From positions 167,819-231,818 of the IMG/VR virus record IMGVR_UViG_3300031933_000215: a stretch of DNA of 64,000 nucleotides; one strand, written 5' to 3'. The notes below the pieces were generated by a model that worked only from the letters and a program-made list of their open reading frames with translations, ran no database searches and was not told the DNA's origin. Made by a program: the position numbers and the translations under genes. Shown here in pieces: positions 26,343 through 50,509 of this stretch. How positions within the stretch are numbered: position 1 is the first letter of the stretch; every line of letters begins with the position of its first letter.

Positions 26343-26546
26343 TTAACCGCCGAACCGCTTGGCCATCCGCGCGGCCAACAGTTCTTGAATGTCTTTGGTG
26401 CTTTGGGTCTCACCCGCAATCTGGGTGGAGGCGGCATCGCCGCCCATCACCTTTTGCAGGGCACTGGCGCCCAGTTCGATCCCGGCGGAAATCACCGCCA
26501 GGTTCTCACCGTACGCGCTATCAAGACTTCTCTTTGTTTCGGACAT
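26343..26546 (-). CDS. Small protein in vRNAP operon
   Basis: ATG 26546 after GAGGA; fills the gap between the beta gene and the head protein gene. Confidence 0.5.
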   Translation of the reverse strand: MSETKRSLDSAYGENLAVISAGIELGASALQKVMGGDAASTQIAGETQSTKDIQELLAARMAKRFGG

Positions 26547-27658
26547 CGGTAGTTCCTCTATAGACAGCTGCGATGTGTTTGGATAGAGCATAGAGCAACG
26601 CATTGGTTGTGCCCATCAGTTTGGGCGACAGCACAATCCGATCCTCAATACTGGTGTTGCCGAAGACGGCGTCGATGGGTTCTCCAGACTCGGTGGTATT
26701 GGTGCCGGTCATGACCCGCGAGAACACCGTTTTCATCTGGTTGCCGAATACACCCTTATCCCCAACAGCAGCCCCCACATCGTGATCGATGTAGATACGC
26801 AGGGCCACAGTGTCCGGGTCGAGGGCTTTCCCCTTAATGCGGAAACTGGTGTCCACCTGACCGGTAAAGGCCGGTTCACCCAGCGCCTTGGCACGACGCT
26901 TGCGTTTCCGATCGCTGGCGACGGCCAGCGTTTGCAGGTTTTCTGACAGGTCCTCGAACTCGCCGTGGTAGAAAACTTCCACCCGACTGACGGTACCGGT
27001 CACCTTAGCCCGGGGCGTCATGGCGGACAACCGACGAAGCGTGTCCATGGCGGCATCATCGAACAGCTGATTTTCAGCCGTTTCCGGATCTTCAATAGTG
27101 CATAGGATTGAGTCAATGTCGACGTGATCGCCTTCTTTGACCAAATCGTGCACGTACTGATCGAACCGAACTTCCACCGTCCGGGTTTCCGTAGTTTGGG
27201 TGGTCAACTTCTTCGCCGCTTCTTGCGAAATCGCCGAGCCGTCTTCCAAGGTGTCGATGTTGTCGATCAAAGCGGTCCGACACATCACCCCACCTTTCCA
27301 TACCACCTGGCCTGGGTTGAGGTGATCGGGGGTAAAGAACTTCTTGTTGTACGCCACGATATCCCCAGCTTTGACCTTACTGCCTTCTTTCAGGTCGGTT
27401 ACCACTTCGTGCGGGTAGGTTACCCCCGCCGCCGTGCCGTGTCGTTTACCCAACTCCACATGAAGCTTTTCACCATCCTTGTATTCAATCACCACCGACT
27501 GCTTGGATACGCTCACCACCTTCCCGTCTTGCTCGGCGGTCGCAGCGAAGATGTCACTGGTGCGATGAGCCACAACTTGCTCGTACCCAGTCCGCAGTGG
27601 CGTGGGCTCGTACCCGTCAGCGAACACCCCTTGTTGCTGCTGGATGGCAACAAAGTTA
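26521..27658 (-). CDS. rpoB: Virion RNA polymerase beta subunit N-terminal gene (phiKZ gp178-like), exon 2
   Basis: Continues ...R-I-NFVAIQQQQG after splicing. Contains the beta sandwich-barrel region, VGDKGVFGNQMKT and IDAVFG (bacterial GDK...GNKG..., D....N). Confidence 0.88.
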
Positions 27659-29053
27659 CACTTGTCCAGTACAGTCGCTACCTGTACCCGGTGTGCTCAG
27701 ACACCTGCTCGCCGTTTCCGACGAGGTCAGACCATCTCATCTCCCGCAATTTAAACTGGTAGGGAGCTTCCCGTTTCGATTTAAAGGTCTTACCGTCAGC
27801 ACCATTCCACGCTGAGCGCCTACCGCTTGGTTCTACTCTACTTGCTTGAATGGTCATTACACCACCACTCGACTTTACACGAGTGTCACTCGGCACCTTC
27901 CGGTGCTGCAGCTTTCGATGGCCGTTGAACACGTCCCTCTGGAGGGATTTCGTAACGGATTGTCTTTTTCATCTCTTCGGGTAAATCAGAATAGTAACAG
28001 TAACGTTTATTGTCGCTGTATACCTTCTGACCTTTTGATCTCAACCTGTAATTCAATGCTGTTGGTTTTAATCCATTAACCTTACAGCAAACAGCCGCCG
28101 ATTCATACCACATCGGGGAATCCCAATCTGCGTCGAAACTGAAAACTACCTTACAGTTCATCCCATCTTGAAGTTCTTCGAATACATCAATAACTTCACG
28201 CCAAGGAACAGCGTTGTTGGAAAACTGAATCTGGTACAGTCCCGGTATAACCGGTTGGGTATGATCATTGGCCCATGTCCAAACCGTAGGTAATTTATAA
28301 CCTACGTAAGGAAGTACATCGGAAAGTTTTTCATAGACCGTGGTGGTGTTGGTTCTTAAATCTTTGAGTAACACAAGTCGAGCACGACCAACCTGTATTT
28401 TCTCAGCGGGCGGCCAGGGATCGGAACTACTTACCCGATAACGCTTACCCTCCGGCCATACGCATTCAGAGCCACGTTCCAATCTACCGTGTATCGAGTA
28501 GCGGTTAACACCGGTGGCTTTTGAACACACGCCAATGGAGGGATAGGTAACAACAACACCACTTTCATGGTCCATTACGTCAACTGGAATTGATTCTTTT
28601 TTCTTACCCCCGTTCTTCCAGTGTTCGACGTTTTCTTTTTGAGTACACCACTCAAGGTTATCTTTCCAATCGTTCCCCGGAATGTGGTCTTTGTGATTAA
28701 CCACATGCTCATCCAAGTTACCTTCGGGTAATGGAAGATGTGCAAGGGCCACAGCGCGGTGACGCTTTATCCCTTGTCGTTCGCCTTCATCGTTCACCAA
28801 GATAGTGTAACGATAACCACGAACATCACTGGACGTCCGTAAGGGTTTTCCGGTTTTCAGGTTGAATAACCTAGCGTCAGACGTAACTCCGTAACGACTG
28901 AAACCAGGAATTGGTTTTATGTCCAACATAACTACACCATAAGTTTTAAACCTATAGCATATGTCAAACAACTTCACCGAAGTTCAGAATTAAGAGTTCT
29001 CCGTTTTAGGGAAGTTTTCGATCAGGGTTTCCCCTGAAAGGGACTATTTGTTA
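27659..29053 (-). mobile_element. Group I self-splicing intron (IA-like, large P7.1/P7.2 extension)
   Basis: P1 GGAU|UA with UAGUCC (U.G at the splice site); P3 CUUCCC/GGGAAG; P4 AACGGA/UCCGUU; P7 GGCCA/UGGUC; P8 CUCCC/GGGAG; P9 GAAA tetraloop; terminal G at 27659. Splicing restores the reading frame. Confidence 0.9.
27886..28977 (-). CDS. Intron-encoded NUMOD4-HNH homing endonuclease with NUMOD1-like C-terminal repeats
   Basis: PIPGFSRYGVTSDARL, HRAVALAHL, VNHKDHIPGND...NLEWCTQKEN motifs; AT-rich. The true start may be a downstream ATG. Confidence 0.88.
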   Translation of the reverse strand: MKLFDICYRFKTYGVVMLDIKPIPGFSRYGVTSDARLFNLKTGKPLRTSSDVRGYRYTILVNDEGERQGIKRHRAVALAHLPLPEGNLDEHVVNHKDHIPGNDWKDNLEWCTQKENVEHWKNGGKKKESIPVDVMDHESGVVVTYPSIGVCSKATGVNRYSIHGRLERGSECVWPEGKRYRVSSSDPWPPAEKIQVGRARLVLLKDLRTNTTTVYEKLSDVLPYVGYKLPTVWTWANDHTQPVIPGLYQIQFSNNAVPWREVIDVFEELQDGMNCKVVFSFDADWDSPMWYESAAVCCKVNGLKPTALNYRLRSKGQKVYSDNKRYCYYSDLPEEMKKTIRYEIPPEGRVQRPSKAAAPEGAE

Positions 29054-32000
29054 ATCCGTTTCGGATCGTCGTGGTCCACCGTGGGTGCCAGCAGGGCCGA
29101 GCTGGACAACAGCTTGGTCGCCCCGTCCGTGTCTTTATTAAAGCGACGGGTGGTGCCGCGCAGGTTTTCGATGTTGGCGTCCGGTGAGAGGTAAGCAATC
29201 ACCCCTACATCACCTGAGTCCACGGTGGATTCACTGACCACCCCCACATCGCTGTCGTGATAGATCCGGGTGTTCTCCACCATGGACTGTGCCCCACGAC
29301 CACCATCACCACGGTACGTCATGGCTTCCTGCTCGCGCAGGTTGGCAATCGGGTTGGAGTCTTCCACAATGGCCACCGACGGGTCTTGGACGATCTTCTG
29401 CCACACCGCGTGCGGGTTCAGTTCCACCGCGTTCTCCCCCACACTGGCACGGGCGTTGAAGGTTTTGGCCGCCCGGGTCAATTCCCCGTAGACCATGCCC
29501 GCCAAACGCTCGTAACCCCGGTACCGCATGTATTCACCACTGACCTCTTCCGGTGAGAAATCGGTCTGCAGCAATTCCACGGCCCGCAGTAGGAGTGGTA
29601 GGAACTCGGTGGGCTCGCCCATGTCTTCCAACAGACCCCGAGTGATCGGGTCCACCCACGCTTGGAACAACGTGTCCATCTCCCGCAGGTAACGAACGCC
29701 CAAACCGGCATCCTCGACCACCCGGTAAAAGACGTCCTTGCGATCAAAGTCCCACACCGAGTATTGCTTCAGTGTTTGGTGGTACCGGTTAAGACCGGCC
29801 AAGACCATGGTGGCCCGTTGATCCAGTCGGGAGAATACCAACACCTCGTCTTCGAAGATCAACGTGTACTCGTCGGATTGCGTCTGCCGTCGCTCACCAC
29901 GTCGCAGGCGGTTTACTTCACAGCCCAGGTACTTGATCAGTTCCGACAGGCCTAGGTGGTATGCCAACACGAACCCAATGGGGAACGTTTTGTTGGCAAT
30001 GCCCATTTCCACGATTTCCAGCGGGGCCTTCTGACTGTCAATGCCCAGCAGGTCGTGCACCGTACCAATGACCTCCATGCCATCGTTAGTCATGACATAA
30101 AAGGTGTTGTACGCGTCCACCACCAACGGATAGCGGTTGTACATACCCACCAGCACCTGCTGATCGGTTTCCACCTCAGCCACGTCAATGCCGTAGGTGT
30201 CTTTGAAATGCTCCGCCCGTCGTTGGTAGTCAAAGTAGAGTTCGTAGTTCCCGGCGTCGAACCGGACAAACCGTTTGGCCAACAAGCTGTAGATCCGTGG
30301 CAGGTGTTCGGTCTTCACAAACACGTTCGACAGCTTCAGGTTGGTGATGGTTTCGTTTTCCGGGTCCATGCCACGAGACGTGATCTGTTTGATCAACCAT
30401 TTCTCGTAGTTGTTCACGCTCCGTTCGGAACGGTCGATGAAAGTCTTATTGTAGTAAGACGTCAACGCCACCCGAGACGGGTTCACCTTTCGGATCGGAA
30501 CGTCGGCCCGTTGCAGACGCATTCGGTTAGTAACACCGTTGGAAATAAAGCGTCCGTCTTTGTCCACCACCGGCAGTCGAAAGCGGATGGTCGACTGGCG
30601 ACCTCGAACCGGTTTCAAGGTCACGGCATGGATCTCATAGTGGTTCATGGTATCGCGAACCGTTTCCACCGTGTAGTCCTTAATGGCCACGCCCTGATTT
30701 TGGACGGCCATGACCGAACTGATGACATCTTTCTTCAGTACGTCCTTAACGTACTTGCGTTGGATACCTTTCAGCTTGGATTCCCGCATGGACTTGTCGG
30801 GAATTGTGTCGGTGTCCGGTACCGGTGTGGGTTCCGGCAGCTCCAAATCCTCAGCACTGACCGTCAACATCTCGGACATCGACCGGCCGGAGCCGTACGG
30901 GTCTTTCAGAGACTGGTACGTTTTCGCGTCTTCAAGGGTACGCTCGTACGCACGGGCGGACATCAGTCCCGCTTCATGCAATTCAAACGCCCGCTTGGCA
31001 ATGCCATCAACCAGTCCTTCCTCAAAGCTGGGCGGCTCAGTGATGCTTTCCACCGGCCCGGTTTCCTCAGCCGGCAAGGTCACCGTTTTCTCAGACTCGC
31101 GCTCCCGCTGTTCGGGAAGTTCGTTGGAATCAAAGACCGGCGTTTCAATGTCACTGACTGGTTCAGGCAACACGATGTCGTCGTCCTCAAACTCCGGCAA
31201 CAATAAATCGTCGTCGTTGTCTTCGCTGACAGACGAGGCCTTGTCCGCCTTGGACTTACTGTCATCCTCAGTGGGTTCGGTTTCAGCCACCTCAACCGTC
31301 TGGGTTTCTTTGGGGTCGGCAGGGTTCTCACCAACCTGAGCGTCGTCTTCCTCGGCGCTGTCTTCGGGTGTGGTTACACCACTCATGAAGTCCCGAAGGC
31401 CATGTAGTAACCGCAGGAAGTACCGCTGCATCTGAGTACCGTCGAGGCCGGTATCGGAATCGTCCTCAGGGTTTTTCCGCCAGTCATCCAACACTCCCAG
31501 GTTGATCACGAAGAAATACCCTTTGAGTTTGACCAGCAAGTTGACCTTCTTCAAAGCGTCGTCGGACAGTACAGACAGGTTGGACTTCTCGCGCTCTTCC
31601 CCCATCCACTGCCACAGATCCAACAGGTTGAACTGCGCCTGGGTGTTGAACAACTCCAACGTCTTCTGGTTCAGGGTCCGACTGGCCCGTTTGAACTCTT
31701 CCAGGGTGGGGAGACGTTCCGGCAGGTGCAGGTCCAAATACTGGTTCCACCCAAACCGACGGTCAGCCTCGGCCACGCGGTTCCAGAACGTCTGGGCCAC
31801 GTTGTTCCAGCGGAAGTAAGGCACCTTGTACGACGGGATGTACCGATACAGCGATGACAGCATGCCGTAATTCACAATCAACACGTTGCGGGTGTTGATG
31901 GTCAGCGCCTGTTCCTTACGCAGGGGTTTGAAACCCCGGGTCTTACGACGGAACTCGTTCTGCAACATGGTGGGGTTCAGTACAGTCCGGCGCGGGTTAC

Positions 32001-32232
32001 CTTCGCGTCCGTCCAGTTCGGTGACGTGTTCAATGAACAGTCGTCCGTTCACATTGCTGAGCAGGGGGTCTTGAGGATTCGGGCCCATGGTGGCGGTGTC
32101 CACCGGCCAGAAGTGGTACACCACCTCGTACGGTAGAATGAGCTTTTCCATGGGAATCAGGCGAGGGCGCATGAGATGGTTGCGTTGCCTCACGCCGGTT
32201 TGACGGTAAAAGACCGATTGTTTTAAACGCAT
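29054..32232 (-). CDS. rpoB: Virion RNA polymerase beta subunit N-terminal gene (phiKZ gp178-like), exon 1
   Basis: Ends ...SESTVDSGDVG...HDDPKR (bacterial DDANR). Spliced product is 1438 aa by coordinate arithmetic. Confidence 0.9.
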
Positions 32233-32242
32233 GTCAACTACC

Positions 32243-33883
32243 TTATTGTGGGCCTGTCATAAAACGCATGGCCAGCGCGACGGTGTGGACGTTCACACTG
32301 AACGCCAGACCACCACCGGCCCGCAAATACGCGGCTCGGGTTTTGAAATACCGTTCCGCCTCTTCAGCGGCTTCTTTGGAGTACGCCGACAGTACCGAGA
32401 CGGTGTCGCCATCAAAGTCGGCGCCCAAAGGACCCAAACGACTGGGGTTGACCGACGTGGAGTCGTGGTACTGTGGTGTTTCGTTGGGTGGGAAGACTGG
32501 AAACTCCAACGCCACGTAGTCATCGCCCTTGCGTTCGAAGTTCTCGTCCAACTCGTAGCGCATTTCCCCCGTCACCGTGGTCTTCACGTACATGCGACAG
32601 GGAATGGAGGACATGAAGTTTTCGACCGGGTAGCGAGTTACGAACGCGTGGTTCTTGTTCCACATGCTCACGCCACTGAGGTAGATCAACTCCAGGTACG
32701 TGGTGGGACGAACCCGTTTGGGGTCGAGGCCTTCGGGAAGATCATCGATGCTGCGCATGATCTTGTAGTTTTCTTGATCGTCAGTGTAAATTAACGCCAA
32801 GTAATGGTCGGCCACTTTCACCGGCTGATGACGTTTCTCCACCACCGACAGTTCGTGGACCACTTTTTCCAGTCCCTCGTCAGTGCCCCACCGATCGATG
32901 TCTTCGTTTGCCACTTCCACCCATGTCCGTTTCAGGGTCTTGGGTTCTACCAGTTCGACGTTGTTCGCCTCAGTCTGGAAGATCTCACCGACCACACCCG
33001 TCTTCAAGGCATAAATGACTTTGGGTAACACGCACTTGGAGGCTTGATACAGCCCAACCACCACGTCGTTAAACTGAGGTCGGTTGCGTGCATCCAGATC
33101 CACCGCTGACGTATCCAAGGAGGACAGAACATTTCGAGTGGTATTGAAGACCCGACGCGAAGCCCAACGTCGTTGAATGAAACCGCCTTTACCGGAGAGC
33201 AGTTTCTCAAAGTGCTCGTACAGCTCCACCAACCGAAGGGTCAGACTGTAACGGGTCCGGTCGTACAGACTCAGGTCGTCGCGGGCCGTCACTCGATCGG
33301 GTAGGGTCCGGGTCAACATCAACACCTTTTGATAGATTTCGTTCACCTCGTCCATGGACAACCGACCGGTGGCGTCGATTTCGGCATCTCGCAGGCCCGC
33401 TGGCAGAACCAACAATTTGTCAAGGAACGCTTTGTCCCGGTATTTGTCCACCAACGTCACCCGAAGGTCACGGATCGCCGATCCGGTTTTCTTGGGCTTC
33501 AGGACTTCCCAGTGTGAGGTGAAGAAGGCGTACCCGGTTTGACCGTCCAATTCAGTGGCCTTTTCAAAGTCGCCGATTTCGGGGTTGAACTTGGCGTAGG
33601 CGCGACCGGACAGAATGTCGCCGTACAGCGATTTCAATTTTACCAGACGGGTGTACACCACCGGGTGCATGATGGGAATCTTGACGTCGATGTAACCAAA
33701 CCGCCGATCTCGATCTGGATCGCCAACACGGCCAAAGGTTTGCGTGGAAAACAAACCATCTTCGTGGAAGTTCCCTCCAGGACCGTCAATGATGTCCAAC
33801 GTCGTCACCGGACGAAGCATTCGCAACTGTTCCGGTGTCGGGACCAGTAGGTCCAGATTCAATGGTAGCAATGCTTTTTTCAT
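32243..33883 (-). CDS. rpoC: Virion RNA polymerase beta-prime subunit carrying the catalytic site (phiKZ gp180-like)
   Basis: DGLFSTQTFG, FGYI...HP, LVLPAGLRD, LLSGKGGFIQ, TRYP and GADFDGD motifs. Confidence 0.93.
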   Translation of the reverse strand: MKKALLPLNLDLLVPTPEQLRMLRPVTTLDIIDGPGGNFHEDGLFSTQTFGRVGDPDRDRRFGYIDVKIPIMHPVVYTRLVKLKSLYGDILSGRAYAKFNPEIGDFEKATELDGQTGYAFFTSHWEVLKPKKTGSAIRDLRVTLVDKYRDKAFLDKLLVLPAGLRDAEIDATGRLSMDEVNEIYQKVLMLTRTLPDRVTARDDLSLYDRTRYSLTLRLVELYEHFEKLLSGKGGFIQRRWASRRVFNTTRNVLSSLDTSAVDLDARNRPQFNDVVVGLYQASKCVLPKVIYALKTGVVGEIFQTEANNVELVEPKTLKRTWVEVANEDIDRWGTDEGLEKVVHELSVVEKRHQPVKVADHYLALIYTDDQENYKIMRSIDDLPEGLDPKRVRPTTYLELIYLSGVSMWNKNHAFVTRYPVENFMSSIPCRMYVKTTVTGEMRYELDENFERKGDDYVALEFPVFPPNETPQYHDSTSVNPSRLGPLGADFDGDTVSVLSAYSKEAAEEAERYFKTRAAYLRAGGGLAFSVNVHTVALAMRFMTGPQ

Positions 33884-33974: not shown

Positions 33975-36900
33975 ATGGCAGACAAACGTAAAGATCTCGC
34001 CGATGACGAGTTCGCCCTTCCTTCTTTGGATCTGGACGATCTCGACGACGGTTTTGATATACCGGACCAACCCGAAGGTCCGGTTCGTAAATTCACGGTG
34101 AACTTCAAACGTGGGTTTTTGGAGCAAACCAAAACCCGCACCATGATGCGTAACTTCCTACGGGGTGCACTGCCCGACGGGTATTCCCGGGCAATGGCGG
34201 GGGCGGAAACCGCATGGGAAGAAGGGGCGGACATCGCCCGCAGTGTCGCTGAACACGCCGACGATGACCTAGAGACCATTGCTTCGAAGACTGAGCAACT
34301 ACTGCCTAAACTGAAGCGGTTTGCGCCGAAGCGGGCGTACGACAAGATCGAGTCCCGGGTCAGCGATGCCCGGAAGGGTTTTGCCAGCCGTGACCGTCGG
34401 ACCCTGTCCCAGCTTCAAGAAGAAAGCAAGGCCAACGAAGAAGCCGAAATTCTAAGGCAAGCGTTGGAGGGACTGGACGAGTCCTACCGTGAGGAAGCTC
34501 AGACCAGTGAGCAATCCGCTCAACGTCGGTTTGAGTCTGAACGGATTGAACGGTCCATCCACGAACAAATCAAGCGTGGTCAAATCGACGGCATCAACCG
34601 TCAGTTGGGTGCCATTCGTGGATCGGTTGAGCATCAGGTTACCTACCAAGACCAGATCACGTACCGGTATCAGCGCAAGTCTCTGGAGATGCAGTACCGC
34701 AGCTATTTCGTGCTGCGTGATCTGCGGAGCTATGCCGACGCCACCAAGAAGCTGCACGAAAACGCCTACTCCGCCATTGTTCACAACACCGGCTTGCCGG
34801 ATCATGCCAAAACCACCCAAGCCGAACGGGTTCGGTTCGGGATGCAGGACCGGACGTCCAGTGCGATCAGCGGTATGATGTCTCAGACGTTGGCCGAGTA
34901 CATGGCCAACTACCTACCGCAGTTGAAAGAGAACATCAAAGACAAGGCTATCTCGGGTGTCCGTGGTGTTGGGTCTATGCTCTCAATGGGTGGTCCGCCG
35001 ATTACCTCTGAGACCATTGGTCGGATGGCCGGCAGTGAAGCGTCCGAACAGGCACAGCGTTACGCCATTCCATTCCTGTCGCGCCTGGCCCGACCGTTTA
35101 TGCGGAAGGCCAGTGATCGCATGGGTGGTTATGACCACCTGGCGAACTACGCCATGAATAACGCTGGGTCCATGATCCAGGACTACACGCAGGATCTGAA
35201 CAACACCGCCGGCTGGCGGGGTATGCTCAAGAACGCGGTACGTTCGGTTGCACCCAGTTATTTCTTGGATGACCAGATCAAGGACGGTTCCTATCAAACC
35301 ATTGACCGGGAGGCGGCGTTTAACCAGCTGACCCAGCGGTCGATTGTGGACATCATTCCTGGGTATCTGTCTCGACTGTTACACGAAACCCGAATGATGC
35401 GAACCGGTCGGGACGATTTGGACCGGGAAGTCTACGACGTTACCTCCGGTAAGTTCAGCGGCTTTAAAGAAGCCAAAGCCAACGCCCGCAAACGGGTGGT
35501 CACCGAAGTCCAGCGTCAGAACATCAACAACACCCTCGATGAGGTGATTGGCAGTTACGATGGGGACGGGGAGCTATCACCCCAAGCACAAGAAGCGTTG
35601 CGTGAACGTCTGCTCCGAGACGCGGCCCGAGGCGGGCGGTTCGATGCCCGTCAGTACGCCGAAGGTGGGTACAGTGCCGATACGGACGAAGAGACCGTAG
35701 AAGAACTGACCTCGTTCTTCAAGAATCGGTTTGAGTTTGACAGCAACGGCCGTCTGGTTCGCAGTAAGGACAACTTCGAGCGGTTGGATGCGTACTCCAA
35801 TGCGTTCTTGGAGTTGAGAAACGTCGTACCCGACCCACGGGGCGAACTGCGCCGTCTCCACGGGGCCGGCTCGCAAGAAATGCTGCGGGAACTGGGTCTG
35901 ATTGACAGCAAGCACGGGGTCGATCGGATTAACTACGACCGCATTTGGGAACTGTACCGCAGCGGTGACCCGGTTGTTGACCCGGAACCGCCTGAGATGG
36001 GTACCGGTGGTGGACCCACCACCCCACCAAACGACTCGCCGAGTTTCCGTCAAAAGCTTAACGACCGCGTAAGGAACGCGGGGGATGTCCTCAGTACACG
36101 GATCAATGAGGCTCGGGAACACGACTGGAAAGGGACGGCTCAGGCCGGTCGGGACGCGTTGAATCGTCGGGTAGATACCGTCCGGGAAAAATCAAAGGGC
36201 ATGGGTTTTAACCCCGATGTGTTCAGTAAGTTCCAACCGGTCACCGACACCTCCATGTCGTTTGTGACCAGCCAGGTCAATAAAGCAAAGGACGCTTTCA
36301 CACCCGTTGGGGATGTCTACAACGGACTGCGGGAGCAACCGTTGCTGTTGGGACGTGACCTACAGGCCGGCAATTACATTGACGTAAACACCGGTAATGT
36401 GATTCGTTCCCTGAAAGACGTTACTGGGGAGATTCGCAACCGTTCAGGCTGGGTGGTGGCCACCGCCGCCGACTTGGCCGGGGACCTGCAGGACAGTACC
36501 GGCCGGTCACTGAAGAGCAGCATGATCGCCGATGCGATGGAGCGTGGTCAAGGAATTGCCGGAAGCTTCGGACGCGGCGTACGCAGCCAGGTTCAAGACT
36601 GGGCCGCCAAAGTCAACGAGCTTAAGGACATTTACCTACCCAATCGCGAAGAGCCGTTGATGTTGGCTCGCGACATCAAGGCCGGTAAGTACTACGATGT
36701 CAACAGCGGGGAACGCATTGAAACCGCCGATGACATCACCGGGGAAGTCAAGGATGAAGACGGCAACACGGTTGTGACCCCCGAGGAGTATGAAACCGGT
36801 TTGGTGGACAACGAAGGTCGCTCTGTAAAGAGTGGTCGCGCCAAAGCGTTCATGAGTCGGTACCTGTCGATCACCACCGCCCCTGGTAAACTTCTGGGTC

Positions 36901-39900
36901 GTGTGGGTATGACGGCCGGCCGTGCGGCTGCCCGTGGTGTGGGTCGTCTGTTGAAAGGTAAGGACCGCGACGCGTATTTGCCTGGTGAAGACGAACCGCG
37001 CATTACGGTTCAAGGTCTGAAGCGCGGACAGTACTTCGATGCGGAGAGTGGCGACGCCATTACGTCGTTCGATGCCATTAAAGGTGGTGTGGTCGATGCC
37101 GACGGTAACATGATTCTCAGCGCTGAAGAGCGCCAAGAACTGGTTACAGCTGGCGGTAAGAAACACCGGGCCGCTCAAGGCATCGTACGTCGAATGATTC
37201 GGGCGGGTACCACTGGACTGGCTAAGAAGGCTGCGGGTGCTTACTGGAACTGGACCAAGAACTATTACCGGAAGCTTCCGGGTCGCTTGGCCAAACTACC
37301 CAAAGTGCCTGGAAAGATCGGGTCGTTCCTTACGGCCAAGCCCCTTCGAGATAAAGTTGGGGAGTGGCTGAACGACGATGAGGAGGAGGTTCCAGAAGAT
37401 GCGGCGAAGACACCAACGGATGGTCTGCTCAAACGCATTCTGAAAACGTTGGACAAACGCCTGCCGGACGAAGATCCGGAGAAAGGGTCGTGGCAGAGTA
37501 TCCTGGCCCGCCGGAAGAAGGAGGACAAGGAAGAAGCGGCAGAGGAGGAATCCGAAAAGCGCGAAGGCAGTCTACTCAAGCGCCTCTTCGGTGGTGTCGG
37601 TGGCCTACTGGGCGCTGGCGGTCGCTGGGACGAAGAAGAGGAGGAGGAAGAAGACGATGGCGACATCAACGCGTACGGCGAGTACAACGGGGGTGACAAG
37701 GAAGACAAGGACCGTAAGAAACGCCGGAATCGTCGGAATCGTTCGCGCAAACCCCGAGGCAAGATCGGTCGTTTGTGGCAGGGTGCTAAGAACCTCGCCA
37801 AAGGCGGTTGGGACAAAGTTAAAGGCCTGGGACGCAGCGTGGCTGGGTCGAAATGGGGTGCTCGCGCACTGAACGTCGGGAAGTCGTTCCTCGGACCCAA
37901 AGGCTGGCTGGCACGGGGTGCCATGGCCGCTGGCAGTGCCATCGCTGGCGCGATCACGGCACCTGTGGCGATCACCGCTGCGGTGGTTGGTGGTGTGGCC
38001 GTGGGCGGTTACATGTACTACAAGAAGCGCAAGCGTGCTTCCGGTGTATTCCGGGAACTGCGCCTCACGCAGTACGGTTTCTCACCCAACGGCTGGAGCA
38101 ACCCTGGCAAGGTCCTGGACATTGAGGACGTTCTGTCTCCGGGTGTGGTTCACCAGTCATCCGGTATGCCCAAACTGGAACTGAACAAAATCGACATGGA
38201 AAAACTCTTCGAAGTCTCAGGGGTTGATAAGGACGACGAAGAGGAGGTGGCGGTATTCGCTGGTTGGTTGGAACATCGTTTCAAACCGATCTTCTTAGCG
38301 TACAATCACGCGCTGGCGGAGCTGGCACCGGAAGTCACCATTCAGGAACTGGATGACAAACTGCCCAAAGAAAAGGGTATGAAGTTCTTGGATATGGTTA
38401 CGTTCAAGGATAATGAGAACAGCCCATACCTGTACATGCACGATCCGTTCGATCCCGGCGATACCGTAGGGATAGACATGGACGACATCAAGGATCGCAT
38501 CGAAGAAGTGAAGGAGGTGTACAAGGAACACGACGAGGACGGGTCGTCCACCGCTGGGAAGACAGCCGTTGCAGCGGCAACCAGTGGCGCGTCGGCCAAT
38601 GCCAGACGGCGCGTCAGAGACCGAGCAACACAGACGGCGAACCGCCAAAACGGCCTCAGTGGAATCAACCCCGAGGACATCAAGCCGTACCAGTTCAATC
38701 GTGGTCGCGGTGGTGCCAATCGGGCCGTTGCGGCTGCTGGCGGCGGTGTGGTTACCATTGCTTCTACTACCGGCAGTGGGCCCGCCGGGTTCGGTAAGCC
38801 CAGTGGGATGCAAAGTCAAACCACCGACATTGCCATCACTCCACTTCAGGCCCTACGTCTACGGGCGTACGGGTTTGGCTCGGATCTGGACCAACCCACC
38901 GCCGAAGCGTTGCTGGCACTGGAAGACCGAGTATTTGACGGTGTGACGGTGCAGCGCAGTGGTAATGGTTCACGCATGTCGTTCAGTTTGAAACCACGCG
39001 AACTGTTTGATTGGTGGCAAGAGCATTACCCGAATGTGCCGGTGGTCTCCGGTCACGAAGGGCCGTTCCGATTCGGTGTCTGGTTACAGAAGAAGATGGG
39101 ACAAGTGGTGAAAGAGTATGTCCAAGGGGTCCTACAAACAGGCACCACCGAAAACTACGCCACGGCGGAGTTGGACATGACCATGGACCAGAAGCTTCAG
39201 GTCGCCACTCGAATCGTGAACATGCGGGTCATTCGGGGTAGCGGTACCGACCGCTACACGCAAAACATCTGGCAAACCCACGATTACATTCAGGCAGAAG
39301 AACCGGATTGGCAAGAGGTCGCTAAACTGGCCGAGGTCGATTACGAGTTCATGAAACGTGTCGCTAAGGAGGTGAAAGAGAAGCCACAAGCAAAAGCCGC
39401 TGAAGCTACTCAAAGTCAAGCCAACGATACCAGTCGTCAACAAAAGCCCCGGGACATCCATGGGCAACCGACCGGTATTGGTACGCGTCCAAACCCAACC
39501 CAGCGTGGTGGGGGCGGTCGTCCGTCATGGACCTCAGACGGCGGACCCATGTGGCAGCAGTACATGCCCAAGGGTCAGGTACAGATGAAAGGAAATGTGT
39601 TTGACGGGTTCACCAAAGGCAACGGCGGGGTGTGGGAGACCATCCCAATGCCTCGCAGTAATAAGTCCATGGAAGCGGCGATTCCGACACTGAGTGCGGT
39701 TGCCCAAATGACGGGTGTCGATCTTGGTATTTTGGTCACGTTCGTGTCCATCGAGTCGGCGTTCGATTATCTGGTCACGGCCCCAACGTCCAGTGCGACA
39801 GGGTGGTTCCAGTTCATCAACGCGACTTGGGATCAGATGCTGAACGAGCACGGAAGTAAGTACCAATTGCCAGCCGACGACGGCCAGCGGTCGCTTCGTA

Positions 39901-40823
39901 AGGACCCGCGTGCCAACGCCCTGATGGGGGCGGAGTTCTTGAAAGGAAACTACAACTTCATCGTTGAGGAACTGGGTCGTCGACCCAGTGACACCGATCT
40001 GTACCTGGCTCATTTCCTGGGTGCGGCCGGTGCGGTTAAGTTCCTCAAACAGGACACCAACGCGATTGCATCGCAGGTGTTCCCTGCCGCTGCCAAAGCG
40101 AACAAGTCGATCTTCATCCTACCCAGTGGACGAGCCCGGACCATCGGGGAAGTCTATCAGGTCATGGACGAGAAGGTGGCCAAGCATCGCCATGGTTTCG
40201 GTGGGCGTGACAGTGGACAACACACCGCCAACGATGAACAGTACTCCCCCGCTCAACCTCAGGTCGCCAATGGGGACATGATTCAGGTGAACGGTGCGGA
40301 CATGCCAACGGCGTATAAACACAAGTCTCAGGTGGGTCGCCCGCCGGGACAAGCGCCAATCAGCATGGCCCAACGTGCCAGTTCGACCGTGAATCCTGTG
40401 AACCAAACCAGCGCCTCGCCCGGTATGTCCATGGGTCAAGGACGACCACCGACTGGTGCACCCGGCGCGTCCGGTGTGCCGAATACCCCGCAGGAAGATC
40501 CGGTGATTCAACATCAGGCTGAACAGCGTCGTCAGGCGCTGGCGGCCGATCGACGTCAGCAAGTCCAAAACGCCCAAACGGCGAACTACTCGAAAGAGAT
40601 GGGCATGGTGATGGAGAAACAGTTGAAGATCCAAGAATCCATGCGGGATTACCTGAAAGAAATTGCGGGTAATATAGCCGGCGCCAAAGTGGATGAGGCG
40701 AGCACCTCAAGCAGTGGTGGGACTGGACAGGAAAGACCGTCCAATGATACGAGTAAACCAACACGCCCGCCTCAAGGGCCAGGATCTCGTAGCACGCCAC
40801 TACCGGTGAACCTGAAAGAGTAA
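33975..40823 (+). CDS. Tail tape-measure/cell-puncturing protein with lytic transglycosylase domain (phiKZ gp181-like)
   Basis: 2282 aa. SLT motifs IESAF, SSATGWFQFINATW, ANALMGAE and LYLAHFLG near 39680-40200; three internal beta repeats. Confidence 0.9.
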   Translation: MADKRKDLADDEFALPSLDLDDLDDGFDIPDQPEGPVRKFTVNFKRGFLEQTKTRTMMRNFLRGALPDGYSRAMAGAETAWEEGADIARSVAEHADDDLETIASKTEQLLPKLKRFAPKRAYDKIESRVSDARKGFASRDRRTLSQLQEESKANEEAEILRQALEGLDESYREEAQTSEQSAQRRFESERIERSIHEQIKRGQIDGINRQLGAIRGSVEHQVTYQDQITYRYQRKSLEMQYRSYFVLRDLRSYADATKKLHENAYSAIVHNTGLPDHAKTTQAERVRFGMQDRTSSAISGMMSQTLAEYMANYLPQLKENIKDKAISGVRGVGSMLSMGGPPITSETIGRMAGSEASEQAQRYAIPFLSRLARPFMRKASDRMGGYDHLANYAMNNAGSMIQDYTQDLNNTAGWRGMLKNAVRSVAPSYFLDDQIKDGSYQTIDREAAFNQLTQRSIVDIIPGYLSRLLHETRMMRTGRDDLDREVYDVTSGKFSGFKEAKANARKRVVTEVQRQNINNTLDEVIGSYDGDGELSPQAQEALRERLLRDAARGGRFDARQYAEGGYSADTDEETVEELTSFFKNRFEFDSNGRLVRSKDNFERLDAYSNAFLELRNVVPDPRGELRRLHGAGSQEMLRELGLIDSKHGVDRINYDRIWELYRSGDPVVDPEPPEMGTGGGPTTPPNDSPSFRQKLNDRVRNAGDVLSTRINEAREHDWKGTAQAGRDALNRRVDTVREKSKGMGFNPDVFSKFQPVTDTSMSFVTSQVNKAKDAFTPVGDVYNGLREQPLLLGRDLQAGNYIDVNTGNVIRSLKDVTGEIRNRSGWVVATAADLAGDLQDSTGRSLKSSMIADAMERGQGIAGSFGRGVRSQVQDWAAKVNELKDIYLPNREEPLMLARDIKAGKYYDVNSGERIETADDITGEVKDEDGNTVVTPEEYETGLVDNEGRSVKSGRAKAFMSRYLSITTAPGKLLGRVGMTAGRAAARGVGRLLKGKDRDAYLPGEDEPRITVQGLKRGQYFDAESGDAITSFDAIKGGVVDADGNMILSAEERQELVTAGGKKHRAAQGIVRRMIRAGTTGLAKKAAGAYWNWTKNYYRKLPGRLAKLPKVPGKIGSFLTAKPLRDKVGEWLNDDEEEVPEDAAKTPTDGLLKRILKTLDKRLPDEDPEKGSWQSILARRKKEDKEEAAEEESEKREGSLLKRLFGGVGGLLGAGGRWDEEEEEEEDDGDINAYGEYNGGDKEDKDRKKRRNRRNRSRKPRGKIGRLWQGAKNLAKGGWDKVKGLGRSVAGSKWGARALNVGKSFLGPKGWLARGAMAAGSAIAGAITAPVAITAAVVGGVAVGGYMYYKKRKRASGVFRELRLTQYGFSPNGWSNPGKVLDIEDVLSPGVVHQSSGMPKLELNKIDMEKLFEVSGVDKDDEEEVAVFAGWLEHRFKPIFLAYNHALAELAPEVTIQELDDKLPKEKGMKFLDMVTFKDNENSPYLYMHDPFDPGDTVGIDMDDIKDRIEEVKEVYKEHDEDGSSTAGKTAVAAATSGASANARRRVRDRATQTANRQNGLSGINPEDIKPYQFNRGRGGANRAVAAAGGGVVTIASTTGSGPAGFGKPSGMQSQTTDIAITPLQALRLRAYGFGSDLDQPTAEALLALEDRVFDGVTVQRSGNGSRMSFSLKPRELFDWWQEHYPNVPVVSGHEGPFRFGVWLQKKMGQVVKEYVQGVLQTGTTENYATAELDMTMDQKLQVATRIVNMRVIRGSGTDRYTQNIWQTHDYIQAEEPDWQEVAKLAEVDYEFMKRVAKEVKEKPQAKAAEATQSQANDTSRQQKPRDIHGQPTGIGTRPNPTQRGGGGRPSWTSDGGPMWQQYMPKGQVQMKGNVFDGFTKGNGGVWETIPMPRSNKSMEAAIPTLSAVAQMTGVDLGILVTFVSIESAFDYLVTAPTSSATGWFQFINATWDQMLNEHGSKYQLPADDGQRSLRKDPRANALMGAEFLKGNYNFIVEELGRRPSDTDLYLAHFLGAAGAVKFLKQDTNAIASQVFPAAAKANKSIFILPSGRARTIGEVYQVMDEKVAKHRHGFGGRDSGQHTANDEQYSPAQPQVANGDMIQVNGADMPTAYKHKSQVGRPPGQAPISMAQRASSTVNPVNQTSASPGMSMGQGRPPTGAPGASGVPNTPQEDPVIQHQAEQRRQALAADRRQQVQNAQTANYSKEMGMVMEKQLKIQESMRDYLKEIAGNIAGAKVDEASTSSSGGTGQERPSNDTSKPTRPPQGPGSRSTPLPVNLKE

Positions 40824-50086: not shown

Positions 50087-50455
50087 TTACTGATTCGGAC
50101 TATGCGGTACGTCAATCCGGATATAGAACGACAAATTCATCGTGCTGTGGTTGTGTATAACGACGGTCCCGCTGTCATTGACACCCGCACTGACAATCGC
50201 GCTGGCATCGACGTACGTGTTGTGCGTGGGGGAATTAGCGTCGGTATCCAGAACCTTAACAATGATGGCCGACCCACGGTAGTCGAAGGCGTTGGGGTTA
50301 TTGACCAACAAAGCGGCCAGGTCATACTGACGCTGAGCACCGGCCGCGATTGACGCGGTCTCTTGCACCGCAATGGTACCGTACCCAAGTGAGGTTCGAT
50401 CAATGATGGCGGCGGTGAACCGCTGGATCGAGGTTCTTAATGCTTCTGTACCCAT
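50087..50455 (-). CDS. Small virion structural protein
   Basis: Beta-rich 122-aa ORF co-transcribed with the fibre-like gene. Confidence 0.55.
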   Translation of the reverse strand: MGTEALRTSIQRFTAAIIDRTSLGYGTIAVQETASIAAGAQRQYDLAALLVNNPNAFDYRGSAIIVKVLDTDANSPTHNTYVDASAIVSAGVNDSGTVVIHNHSTMNLSFYIRIDVPHSPNQ

Positions 50456-50509
50456 GACTGTTTCCTATTAAAGGCCCTGGATCACCCAGGGCCGCTATGT
50501 CGTTGGTGG

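What the first reader, a model, noticed from the sequence alone, without database searches (positions are those of the whole stretch)
27659..29053. Group I intron with HNH endonuclease splitting the virion RNAP beta subunit at DDPKR-I-NF
Seen: all core pairings are present, with a compensated P7 (GGCCA/UGGUC instead of GACUA/UAGUC). Predicted junction ...AAA CGG AT|T AAC TTT... restores a 1438-aa subunit; unspliced RNA stops at TAG 29044. Known: RNAP-gene introns occur in jumbo phages, and the PhiPA3 intron endonuclease gp210 was reported to attack a co-infecting relative. Inference: this element may also mediate phage-phage interference, and virion infectivity depends on splicing.
Basis: partly seen in the sequence, partly recalled or inferred. 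Interest (0 to 1): 0.6.

Follow-up and report, generated by a model that had tools for sequence, protein, structure and literature searches.

The report
Mobile intron in phage polymerase gene
A 1,395-base self-splicing group I intron carrying its own DNA-nicking enzyme gene interrupts an essential RNA polymerase gene of an uncultured jumbo phage. A nearly identical phage from another sample lacks exactly these 1,395 bases, so the element is real, precisely bounded and mobile, but it belongs to an already known kind.

Summary
On the minus strand, 29053..27659 is a group I intron that splits the orthologue of phiKZ gp178 / PhiPA3 gp211-209 (virion RNA polymerase beta). It sits after the second base of an Ile codon, in ..DDPKR-I|NF...

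The strongest evidence is a 226-kb contig of a 97.5%-identical phage that lacks exactly these 1,395 bases. It encodes an uninterrupted 1,438-aa protein, 99% identical to the two exons.

Four related introns at the same site, two of them without an ORF, align over the whole ribozyme. They show compensatory changes in P1, P2, P4, P5, P7.1, P7.2, P8, P9 and P9.2.

The 347-aa HNH gene (28929..27886) lies in loop L5. Its last ~32 codons overlap P5'-P7.1. It is under purifying selection and is a full-length homologue (37%) of PhiPA3 gp210.

- The insertion site is 11 nt downstream of the PhiPA3 site.
- The ribozyme is of a different lineage, closest to a phage EL intron.
- Exon differences from the intron-less allele cluster within 105 nt upstream and 298 nt downstream, as in a co-conversion tract.
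- Three staggered insertion sites with homologous endonucleases lie within 20 nt.

Splicing, cleavage and phage-phage interference remain untested, because no RNA data exist.

The parts
29054..32232 (-). Exon 1 of the virion RNAP beta-subunit gene (codons 1-1059 plus the first two bases of Ile-1060). If unspliced, the frame runs on to TAG 29046..29044.
   Evidence: phrog_3148 profile positions 2-1055 of 1424. 47% identical to phage Noxifer and collinear up to R1075 of its intact gene. 1055/1059 identical to residues 1-1059 of the intron-less P0028.
27659..29053 (-). Group I intron, 1,395 nt, from U 29053 to omega-G 27659.
   Evidence: Exactly these 1,395 bases are absent from the X7 contig / L014. 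RF00028 gives 25.8 bits, E 4.9e-4. Its ORF-less homologues score 57.6 bits (L015) and 49.6 bits (L016). Covariation is shown.
29041..29057 (-). P1: exon GGAU (29057..29054) plus intron UA (29053..29052) pair with the internal guide UAGUCC (29046..29041). The splice-site U pairs with G.
   Evidence: Read from the sequence. Exon and guide covary: GGAU/GUCC in the window, L013, L015 and L016, against GAGU/GCUC in L018.
29022..29037 (-). P2 hairpin UCAGGG-GAAA-CCCUGA.
   Evidence: 6/6 pairs are kept in all five introns, with four different stem sequences.
28992..29014 (-). 5' strands of P3 (CUUCCC, 29014..29009), P4 (ACGGA, 29004..29000) and P5 (UCUU, 28995..28992), joined by J3/4 UAAAA. All lie upstream of the ORF.
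   Evidence: They align column for column with the contiguous ORF-less introns L015 and L016. Their partners are GGGAAG 27772..27767, UCCGU 27959..27955 and AAGA 27966..27963. P4 and P5 show compensatory changes.
27967..28991 (-). The ~1,025-nt insert in loop L5/P5a that carries the endonuclease gene. It is absent from the ORF-less relative L015, where P5 closes with a 3-nt loop.
   Evidence: Alignment of the window, L013 and L018 against L015 and L016.
27886..28929 (-). HNH homing-endonuclease gene, 347 aa, ATG 28929 to TGA 27888..27886. A longer frame from GTG 28977 is possible, but relatives start at the ATG. The last ~32 codons overlap P5', P4', P6, J6/7, P7 and P7.1.
   Evidence: Pfam HNH_3 25.8 bits against a cut-off of 24.8, and phrog_59 at 4e-34. 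37% identical to PhiPA3 gp210 over 319 aa, with H79 aligned to the catalytic H82 (PMC11620839). I-HmuI (1U3E) at E 6.7e-8. pN 0.20 against pS 0.80 over codons 1-315, and pS 0.20 in the overlap.
27917..27966 (-). 3' strands of P5 and P4, then P6/P6a (27954..27930), J6/7 UUCAAC (27929..27924) and the 5' strand of P7, GGCCAUC (27923..27917).
27773..27906 (-). Peripheral extension between P7 and P3'. It holds P7.1 (27906..27893), P7.2 (27885..27866) and further hairpins, a hallmark of subgroup IA introns.
   Evidence: Compensatory changes in P7.1, P7.2 and the following hairpins. The stretch 27851..27767 is ~80% identical to group I introns of Acinetobacter, Brochothrix and Yersinia phages.
27730..27772 (-). 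P3 3' strand GGGAAG (27772..27767), P8 (27766..27741), J8/7, and the P7 3' strand GAUGGUC (27736..27730).
   Evidence: J8/7-P7 aligns to the RF00028 consensus.
27659..27725 (-). P9 (27725..27708), P9.1 (27705..27690), P9.2 (27687..27669) and the terminal ..GGACAAGUG ending in omega-G 27659.
   Evidence: Compensatory changes in P9 and P9.2. 78-79% identical to the 3' end of the phage EL RNAP-gene intron, with covarying stems.
26521..27658 (-). Exon 2 (third base of Ile-1060, codons 1061-1438, stop). Bases +5..+9 (UUUGU) can pair with ACAAA of the P1 loop, giving a candidate P10.
   Evidence: phrog_3148 positions 1055-1423. Collinear with Noxifer from F1078. 377/378 identical to P0028 residues 1061-1438. 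The P10 covariation, UUUGU/ACAAA in the window against UUCGU/ACGAA in L013, is read.
27361..29158 (-). Zone of clustered, almost purely synonymous differences from the intron-less allele. It covers 105 nt of exon 1 (29158..29054) and 298 nt of exon 2 (27658..27361) around the intron, and looks like a co-conversion tract.
   Evidence: 19 mismatches in the 105 nt and 38 in the 298 nt. Beyond them there are 5 in the next ~2,100 nt upstream and 4 in 840 nt downstream. Over both exons 103 changes are synonymous and 5 are not.

Best explanation
Bases 29053..27659 (minus strand) are a mobile, self-splicing group I intron. Its core is of the subgroup-IA kind, with P7.1/P7.2 and P9.1/P9.2 extensions. 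It interrupts the virion RNA polymerase beta-subunit gene 11 nt downstream of the codons for the conserved DD motif.

Inferred mechanism:
1. The pre-mRNA folds so that exon bases GGAU pair with the internal guide GUCC, placing a U.G wobble at the cleavage site.
2. Exogenous guanosine, bound at P7, attacks after U 29054.
3. The freed exon attacks after omega-G 27659.
4. The result is CGG AUU AAC and an uninterrupted 1,438-aa subunit. Without splicing, translation stops three codons into the intron.

Loop L5 holds a separately acquired 347-aa I-HmuI-like HNH endonuclease gene, homologous to PhiPA3 gp210. Its tail is read through the ribozyme core.

The enzyme most likely nicks the intron-less allele in or near the conserved ..DD.KR.. 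coding stretch. Repair from the intron-bearing genome would then copy the intron together with some flanking exon sequence.

Shown here: the boundaries, the conserved RNA structure, the intact and selected endonuclease gene, and presence/absence among near-identical phages with a conversion-like tract.

Inferred only: splicing activity, nicking and its position, the direction of the transfer, and any competitive effect.
For: Junction:
- The phrog_3148 profile is covered 2-1055 by exon 1 and 1055-1423 by exon 2.
- In the intact Noxifer gene, exon 1 ends at R1075 and exon 2 begins at F1078. That leaves exactly the two residues (I, N) the junction supplies.
- Run X7 holds a 226,237-bp contig at depth 95 that skips exactly 1,395 bases here.
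- Its gene (L014) encodes the 1,438-aa P0028. Exon 1 maps to residues 1-1059 and exon 2 to 1061-1438.
- L016 has no border repeat, and only the same position gives U before and G at the end of the intron.

Ribozyme:
- RF00028 matches at E 4.9e-4 on the stretch and 1.6e-5 on the genome.
- The ORF-less homologues score 57.6 and 49.6 bits. Their cores are 79% and 87% identical to the window's.
- All helices P2-P9.2 are kept in five introns. 36 of 82 pairs in the 3' half have compensatory changes.
- P1 covaries between exon and guide.

Endonuclease.

Mobility:
- The intron is 46% G+C against 56% in the exons.
- Identical intron-bearing contigs occur in three freshwater runs from three other studies.
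Against: - No RNA evidence exists. No RNA run holds the sequence, so splicing is inferred from structure and from conservation of the gene.
- The window itself stays below Rfam's gathering score (25.8 against 50).
- P3, P6 and most of P7 are invariant in the five introns, so they are compatible with the structure but not proven by covariation.
- The ORF overlaps the ribozyme core, which could let translation interfere with folding.
- Whether the tract marks intron gain in this lineage or intron loss in the X7 lineage could not be resolved.
Confidence: 0.9

Rival explanations
1. The gene is naturally split into two separately translated subunit genes, with a free-standing HNH gene between them and no splicing. 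This is how public gene calls treat it: 1,062 aa plus 350 or 368 aa.
For: Gene callers in public collections report fragments of 1,062, 350 and 368 aa. Multisubunit RNAPs of these phages do have split beta and beta' genes elsewhere (annotation notes; phrog hits).
Against: - A complete group I fold flanks the HNH gene and is kept by compensatory changes.
- The break falls inside a codon.
- Exon 2 has no start codon until GTG 27627, ten codons in. That would delete the conserved NFVAIQQQQG stretch.
- Two relatives carry the same intervening RNA with no ORF at all.
- A 97.5%-identical phage has one continuous gene.
Confidence: 0.03
2. The intron is a decayed, splicing-incompetent relic, and the polymerase gene of this phage is a pseudogene or depends on a helper.
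For: No RNA data exist. The Rfam score is low. One relative (L015) has two extra bases after the expected omega-G, which would break the frame.
Against: - Every core element of the window's copy is intact and pairs fully.
- The low Rfam score is explained by the ORF in L5. ORF-bearing relatives score 31-36 bits and ORF-less ones 50-58 bits.
- Both exons are 99% identical in protein to the intact orthologue, with 103 synonymous and 5 non-synonymous differences.
- The same sequence recurs in runs from several studies.
Confidence: 0.04
3. The ribozyme splices, but the HNH protein no longer acts as a homing enzyme. It would be inactive or domesticated, for example as a maturase or for an unrelated DNA function, and the presence/absence polymorphism would come from ordinary recombination.
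For: No cleavage data exist. The direction of the conversion event is unresolved. ORF-less versions of the intron persist in relatives.
Against: - The catalytic His aligned to gp210 H82 and the HNH motif are kept.
- The protein is under strong purifying selection over its whole length, pN 0.20 against pS 0.80.
- It keeps full-length homology, including the C-terminal two thirds, to gp210, an endonuclease shown to nick this target region (PMC11620839).
- The recombination tract is centred exactly on the insertion site.
Confidence: 0.2

Closest known systems
PhiPA3 gp210 intron (Birkholz et al. 2024, Science; PMC11620839) and its unannotated counterpart in Serratia phage Haymo/2050HW
   Same: - Same host gene (orthologue of phiKZ gp178) and same conserved DD..KR region.
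- Group I intron carrying an HNH endonuclease of the same family: 37% and 33% identity over ~317 aa, with the catalytic His conserved.
- Same gene neighbourhood.
   Different: - The insertion site is 11 nt further downstream. PhiPA3 and Haymo read GAU GAU | AUG/CCA AAA, while the window reads ..AAA CGG AU | U AAC.
- The ORF lies in L5 and overlaps the core. In PhiPA3 and Haymo it lies upstream of P2/P3.
- P7 is GGCCAUC/GAUGGUC, not GACUA/UAGUC.
- There is a much longer P7.1-P7.2 region.
- No functional data exist for the window's element.
Group I intron with HNH gene in another RNAP beta-subunit gene of Pseudomonas phage EL (ORF024/025/026) and EL-like phages
   Same: - Closest published ribozyme. 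It has the same P7 (GGCCA/UGGUC), and its last ~88 nt are 78-79% identical, with covarying P9 and P9.2 stems and the same ..GGACAAGUG end.
- RF00028 scores it 54.9 bits.
   Different: - A different host gene (phrog_2987).
- The ORF lies upstream of P3.
- Its endonuclease matches the window's only in the N-terminal HNH domain, over 65 aa.
SPO1/SP82 DNA-polymerase introns with the nicking HNH enzymes I-HmuI and I-HmuII (Goodrich-Blair & Shub 1996; Landthaler et al. 2004; cited from PMC12908238 and from memory)
   Same: - A phage group I intron in a conserved motif of an essential polymerase gene.
- An I-HmuI-type HNH domain (1U3E, E 6.7e-8).
- The expected mechanism: a nick, repair from the intron-bearing genome, and co-conversion of flanks with marker exclusion.
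   Different: - A different gene and a different phage group.
- Those enzymes were characterised biochemically, whereas here nothing has been tested.
T4 td / I-TevI and Bacillus mojavensis thyA / I-BmoI: related endonucleases in introns at staggered positions of one conserved target (Edgell & Shub 2001; recalled from memory, paper not held)
   Same: Homologous endonucleases tied to one conserved coding stretch but carried by different introns inserted a few to some tens of bases apart. Here the same pattern is seen for sites C, A and B.
   Different: - Those enzymes are GIY-YIG, not HNH.
- The exact spacing in that system is from memory and was not checked.

Membership tests
Group I intron (Rfam RF00028) | 5' exon ends in U, which forms a U.G wobble with the internal guide sequence in P1 | tested here: met
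   GGAU|UA pairs with UAGUCC. The pairing covaries with L018, GAGU/GCUC.
Group I intron (Rfam RF00028) | Intron ends in G (omega-G) | tested here: met
   G 27659. The same ..GGACAA(N2-4)G end is found in L013, L016, L018 and phage EL.
Group I intron (Rfam RF00028) | Conserved core: P3-P4-P5-P6 and P7-P3'-P8-P7', with conserved J3/4, J6/7 and J8/7 | tested here: met
   All helices are found and kept in five homologous introns. P4, P5, P8 and the peripheral helices show compensatory changes. P3 and P6 are invariant, and P7 varies on one side only (G.U in four introns, A-U in L015), so these three are compatible but not proven by two-sided change.
Group I intron (Rfam RF00028) | Score at or above Rfam's gathering threshold (50 bits) | tested here: not met
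   The window scores 25.8 bits, E 4.9e-4. The 1-kb ORF in L5 splits the model. The contiguous ORF-less homologues score 57.6 bits (L015, met) and 49.6 bits (L016). I could not submit an ORF-deleted construct to the Rfam tool.
Group I intron (Rfam RF00028) | Excision restores an uninterrupted, collinear reading frame | tested here: met
   Contiguous profile coverage, collinearity with Noxifer, and a natural intron-less allele shorter by exactly 1,395 nt.
Group I intron (Rfam RF00028) | Guanosine-dependent self-splicing | not testable with these tools
   No RNA run holds the sequence. An in-vitro assay or RT-PCR is needed.
HNH homing endonuclease of the I-HmuI / gp210 type | HNH catalytic motif with the conserved His | tested here: met
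   Pfam HNH_3 25.8 bits (cut-off 24.8) at residues 56-101. H79 aligns with gp210 H82, whose H82R mutant is inactive (PMC11620839). I-HmuI 1U3E at E 6.7e-8.
HNH homing endonuclease of the I-HmuI / gp210 type | Encoded inside a self-splicing intron, with full-length similarity to a characterised member | tested here: met
   The ORF lies in L5 of the intron. It is 37% identical over 319 of 347 aa to gp210.
HNH homing endonuclease of the I-HmuI / gp210 type | Site-specific nicking or cleavage of the intron-less allele near the insertion site | not testable with these tools
   Only indirect evidence: purifying selection and a conversion-like tract centred on the site.
PhiPA3-type interference intron (gp210 system) | Same insertion site as the PhiPA3 intron (directly after the DD codons) | tested here: not met
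   The window's site is 11 nt downstream.
PhiPA3-type interference intron (gp210 system) | The endonuclease damages the homologous gene of a co-infecting relative and lowers its fitness | not testable with these tools
   A natural intron-less relative exists in a similar habitat: X7 is an oil production facility sample, and the source-like runs are gas well, rock and subsurface samples. Co-infection and cleavage are unknown.

The most novel reading that the evidence does not exclude
The 20-nt stretch coding ..D|HDD|xKR-I|N.. of the virion RNAP beta gene may be a battleground of at least three rival introns. They sit at site C (9 nt upstream of the PhiPA3 site), site A (PhiPA3) and site B (this window). 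Their endonucleases are full-length homologues that recognise the same conserved DNA, but they ride in different ribozymes.

Each insertion would destroy the target of the others. An endonuclease from one site could then attack not only intron-less genomes but also genomes carrying a rival intron, as I-HmuI and I-HmuII do. The element would then work as an exclusion weapon between jumbo phages that share a host. The conversion tract seen here would be the trace of one such encounter.
Probability: 0.25. Interest if true: 0.65.

Novelty: new member of a known kind. Interest (0 to 1): 0.45.

Why it matters
The only studied case of an intron endonuclease acting as a weapon between viruses is PhiPA3 gp210. 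This window shows that the same endonuclease family sits in the same polymerase motif of distant, uncultured jumbo phages, at a different insertion point and in a different ribozyme.

It also supplies a natural matched pair. One genome carries the intron and one lacks it, they are otherwise ~99.8% identical around the gene, and a sharply bounded tract of foreign exon sequence surrounds the site. That pair gives the exact homing site for cleavage assays, and it is a direct population-level trace of intron movement or removal.

For annotation, public gene calls split this essential gene into 1,062-aa and 350/368-aa fragments. At least 13 of 24 sampled homologues are interrupted within the same 20 nt, mostly unannotated.

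Tried and rejected
- Rfam at the gathering threshold on the whole window found nothing. The match appears only in E-value mode.
- Megablast of the region against published phages found nothing. No close published relative exists; the best RNAP beta match is 47% (Noxifer).
- A scan of viral contigs for the conserved P7'-P9.1 pattern returned only phage EL.
- No RNA sequencing run holds the stretch, so splicing could not be observed.
- I tried to tell intron gain from intron loss in two ways. I compared the divergent tract of both alleles with four outgroups, and I looked at GC3 and substitution direction. Both gave mixed results and no conclusion.
- Adding phage EL to the alignment of 3' halves misaligned P6-P7, so EL was left out of the covariation count.
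- In my first helix table, three helices (P7.2a, P7.3, P9.1) were anchored at the wrong place. For these I rely on RNAalifold.
- Papers on I-HmuI/I-BasI and I-BmoI/I-TevI site spacing are not held. Those comparisons are from memory.
- Intein and frameshift readings were considered and dropped. The intervening sequence has stops in the exon frame and folds as a ribozyme.
All searches and comparisons were done exon by exon, by reference. The two exon strings were put together once, inside a script, only to count G+C.
Full report
**What is there.** The feature lies on the minus strand. A 1,062-codon frame (32232..29044) ends ..GAC GAT CCG AAA CGG ATT AAC AAA TAG. About 1.4 kb downstream, the text ..AAGTG TAAC TTT GTT GCC ATC CAG.. 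resumes a frame that runs to 26521. Between them lies a 347-codon ORF, ATG 28929 to TGA 27886.

**Host gene and surroundings.** Exon 1 matches PHROG 3148 ("RNA polymerase beta subunit") over profile positions 2-1055 of 1424, and exon 2 over 1055-1423. The two pieces therefore abut on the profile without gap or overlap. The best published relatives are jumbo phages: Noxifer at 47%, PhiPA3 gp211 at 47%, and phiKZ gp178 at 51% over the C-terminal two thirds. Birkholz et al. identify phiKZ gp178 and PhiPA3 gp211/209 as a virion RNAP subunit (PMC11620839). The neighbours match the PhiPA3 order:
- a phrog_2986 RNAP subunit gene at 33883..32243;
- a divergently transcribed 2,282-aa giant gene at 33975..40823.

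The window is bases 167819-231818 of a 231,818-bp IMG/VR virus record with terminal repeats.

**The junction.** Everything below is exon by exon.
- In the uninterrupted 1,454-aa Noxifer gene, exon 1 aligns up to R1075 and exon 2 from F1078. That leaves exactly two residues, which the predicted junction supplies as I and N.
- Laying public contigs on the gene gave the decisive result. Run X7 (an oil production facility metagenome) holds a 226,237-bp contig at depth 95. It matches both exons and skips exactly 1,395 bases at this place.
- That contig's gene (L014 3001-7317) encodes the 1,438-aa P0028. Window exon 1 maps to residues 1-1059 (1055/1059 identical), and exon 2 to 1061-1438 (377/378).
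- The intron-less allele reads CGG ATC AAC TTC where the window reads CGG AT | T AAC TTT.
- Because TAAC stands at both borders in the window, the excision could be drawn in five registers. Only 29053..27659 gives U before the 5' site and G as the last intron base.
- In the relative L016 the borders share no repeat, and the same register is the only one that fits.

**The ribozyme.** Rfam's gathering threshold is not reached in the window. In E-value mode RF00028 matches 28079..27708 at 25.8 bits, E 4.9e-4, or 1.6e-5 for the single family on the whole genome. The aligned parts are P6, J6/7-P7, J8/7-P7' and P9.

The low score has a clear cause, revealed by relatives found through a protein search with exon 1 and their contigs. 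Four other phages, whose RNAP beta is 81%, 59%, 59% and 36% identical, carry an intron at the same codon position:

| Locus | Intron length | HNH ORF | RF00028 score |
|---|---|---|---|
| L013 | 1,398 nt | yes | 30.8 bits |
| L018 | 1,399 nt | yes | 36.2 bits |
| L016 | 386 nt | no | 49.6 bits |
| L015 | 372 nt | no | 57.6 bits |

The ORF-less cores are 87% (L016) and 79% (L015) identical to the window's ribozyme, and they align to it end to end.

The alignment shows that the window's 5' 62 nt hold P1, P2 and the 5' strands of P3 (CUUCCC), P4 (ACGGA) and P5 (UCUU). A 1,025-nt insert follows in loop L5. The 3' strands of P5 and P4, then P6, P7 and the rest, come after it. In L015, P5 closes with a three-base loop at exactly this point.

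All helices are kept in all five introns. Compensatory changes occur in P2, P4, P5, P7.1, P7.2, P8/P8a, P9 and P9.2. RNAalifold on the contiguous 3' halves finds 82 pairs, 36 of them with double changes. P3 and P6 are invariant.

L015 has GACCAUC, which turns the G.U into A-U.

P1 covaries between exon and guide, which fixes the 5' splice site independently. It is GGAU/GUCC in four introns and GAGU/GCUC in L018, where the exon codons are AGA GU instead of CGG AU.

A candidate P10 pairs exon-2 bases +5..+9 with the P1 loop. It covaries between the window (UUUGU/ACAAA) and L013 (UUCGU/ACGAA).

The long P7.1/P7.2 region marks the core as subgroup-IA-like. That assignment is an inference from established group I classification.

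**The endonuclease.**
- The ORF has a Pfam HNH_3 domain (25.8 bits, cut-off 24.8) and matches phrog_59 at 4e-34.
- It matches I-HmuI (1U3E) at 6.7e-8 over residues 5-111.
- It is 37% identical to PhiPA3 gp210 over 319 residues. H79 aligns with H82, the residue whose mutation abolishes nicking by gp210 (PMC11620839).
- Against the copies in L013 (72% aa) and L018 (60% aa), codons 1-315 show pN 0.20-0.27 against pS 0.77-0.80. The protein is therefore under purifying selection.
- In the last 32 codons pS falls to 0.20-0.28. This is expected where the same bases must also form P5', P4', P6, P7 and P7.1.

**Signs of mobility.** The window and the intron-less X7 phage differ at 109 of 4,317 exon positions, of which 103 are synonymous. 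These differences are not spread evenly:
- 19 lie in the 105 nt just upstream of the intron;
- 38 lie in the 298 nt just downstream;
- only 5 lie in the next ~2,100 nt upstream, and 4 in the remaining 840 nt downstream.

This sharply bounded, asymmetric patch of about 13-18% divergence, centred on the insertion site, is what co-conversion of flanking exons during homing leaves behind. Removal of the intron by recombination with a divergent intron-less phage would leave the same patch. Outgroup comparisons and composition did not settle the direction.

Two further observations bear on mobility. The intron is 46% G+C against 56% for the exons. Contigs identical to the intron-bearing form occur in three freshwater metagenome runs from three further studies.

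**Comparison with the known case.** The PhiPA3 and Haymo introns lie directly after the DD codons, GAU GAU | AUG or CCA AAA. I call this site A. The window's intron lies 11 nt further on, at site B.

A third site, C, is used in L011. It lies 9 nt upstream of A and reads ..GCG GAU | CAU GAC GAU.., with a 518-aa ORF.

Among 24 homologues whose border could be read, the counts are as follows:

| State | Number of homologues |
|---|---|
| Site B | 7 |
| Site A | 5 |
| Site C | 1 |
| Intact | 11 |

The endonucleases of sites A, B and C are homologous over their full length, 29-39% over about 315 aa. The HNH proteins of introns in other RNAP genes match only in the N-terminal nuclease domain; these are phage EL ORF025 and the second intron of this same genome. 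The DNA-binding part thus goes with the target region, not with the ribozyme.

The ribozymes differ. Site-A introns have the canonical GACUA/UAGUC P7, a short P7-P3' spacer, and the ORF upstream of P2/P3. The window's core is closest to the phage EL intron in a different RNAP gene.

In the published collection, 245 of 278 phages with a match are uninterrupted across this region. A few are split at site A. Raoultella phage VB_ZK_P1 is split at or within one base of site B, and that intron is not annotated.

**How it most likely works.**
- Shown: precise boundaries, a conserved group I fold, an intact and selected HNH gene, and presence/absence with a conversion-like tract.
- Inferred from the established group I and I-HmuI/gp210 mechanisms: guanosine-initiated two-step splicing that yields the 1,438-aa subunit, followed by nicking of intron-less alleles in the DD..KR coding stretch and repair-mediated copying of the intron with its flanks.
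- Inferred from the gp178 phenotype in PMC11620839: without splicing the subunit is truncated at residue 1,062, which should block production of infectious particles.
- Possible but untested: interference against co-infecting relatives.

**Verdict.** This is a real, precisely defined mobile group I intron with an HNH homing-endonuclease gene, and it is a new member of a known kind. The points of interest are the staggered site, the different ribozyme with the ORF in L5, the natural intron-less partner with its tract, and the three-site hot spot.

Noticed in passing
Outside the window: own genome G000:C1 about 50250-51560 (+), = L008 587-1872: A second group I intron (RF00028 69.7 bits, canonical GACUA/UAGUC P7) with a 330-aa HNH gene splits another RNAP beta-subunit gene of the same phage. 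The break is at position 403 of the phrog_3295 profile.
   Followed up: partly
L011 3373-3742, 8779-9126, 10098-10424 (JGI contig, RNAP beta 62% identical): Three RF00028 matches above threshold lie within 7 kb: one in the upstream RNAP gene and two in the gp178 orthologue. The first of those two sits at a third site (..APCAD|HDD..), 9 nt upstream of the PhiPA3 site, with a 518-aa NUMOD-type ORF.
   Followed up: partly
L015 3960-3975: The ORF-less site-B intron of this Logan contig has two extra bases (CA) between the expected terminal ..GUG and exon 2. Splicing at the homologous G would therefore shift the frame. This may be an assembly error, a decaying intron, or an unusual 3' site.
   Followed up: no
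window 28978..28955 (-), within L5 upstream of the HNH start: A stretch reading GUUUGACAUAUGCUAUAGG is identical in the window and L013 and similar in L018. It lies about 30-50 nt before the endonuclease start codon, and it may be a promoter or translational control element for the ORF. It was not tested.
   Followed up: no
L019 (Raoultella phage VB_ZK_P1, PV662128.1) about 760-2190: This published phage has an unannotated HNH-bearing group I intron in the same gene, at or within one base of site B (CGG U|CA CUU by the U / omega-G rule). It combines a canonical P7 and an ORF upstream of P3 with a window-like 3' end..CACACCGGG..GGACAAUAGG.
   Followed up: partly
window about 27905-27970, runs X4-X6 (tables 4 and 7): Low-depth freshwater contigs match the window on one side of P5'/P7 and then run into other sequence. 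One continues as an ORF-less 5' half (..CCCUAAAACGGGG..). This hints at variants of the same intron with and without the ORF, or with another 3' half, in one sample.
   Followed up: no
window about 31294..32150 (-), 5' part of exon 1: A second patch of clustered differences from the X7 phage: 44 mismatches between 2,241 and about 3,100 nt upstream of the junction, next to long identical stretches. This suggests mosaic recombination unrelated to the intron.
   Followed up: no
L018 2917-3247: Another near-threshold RF00028 match (47.8 bits) lies in the gene upstream of the gp178 orthologue of this distant relative. Introns in several RNAP genes therefore seem common in this phage group.
   Followed up: no
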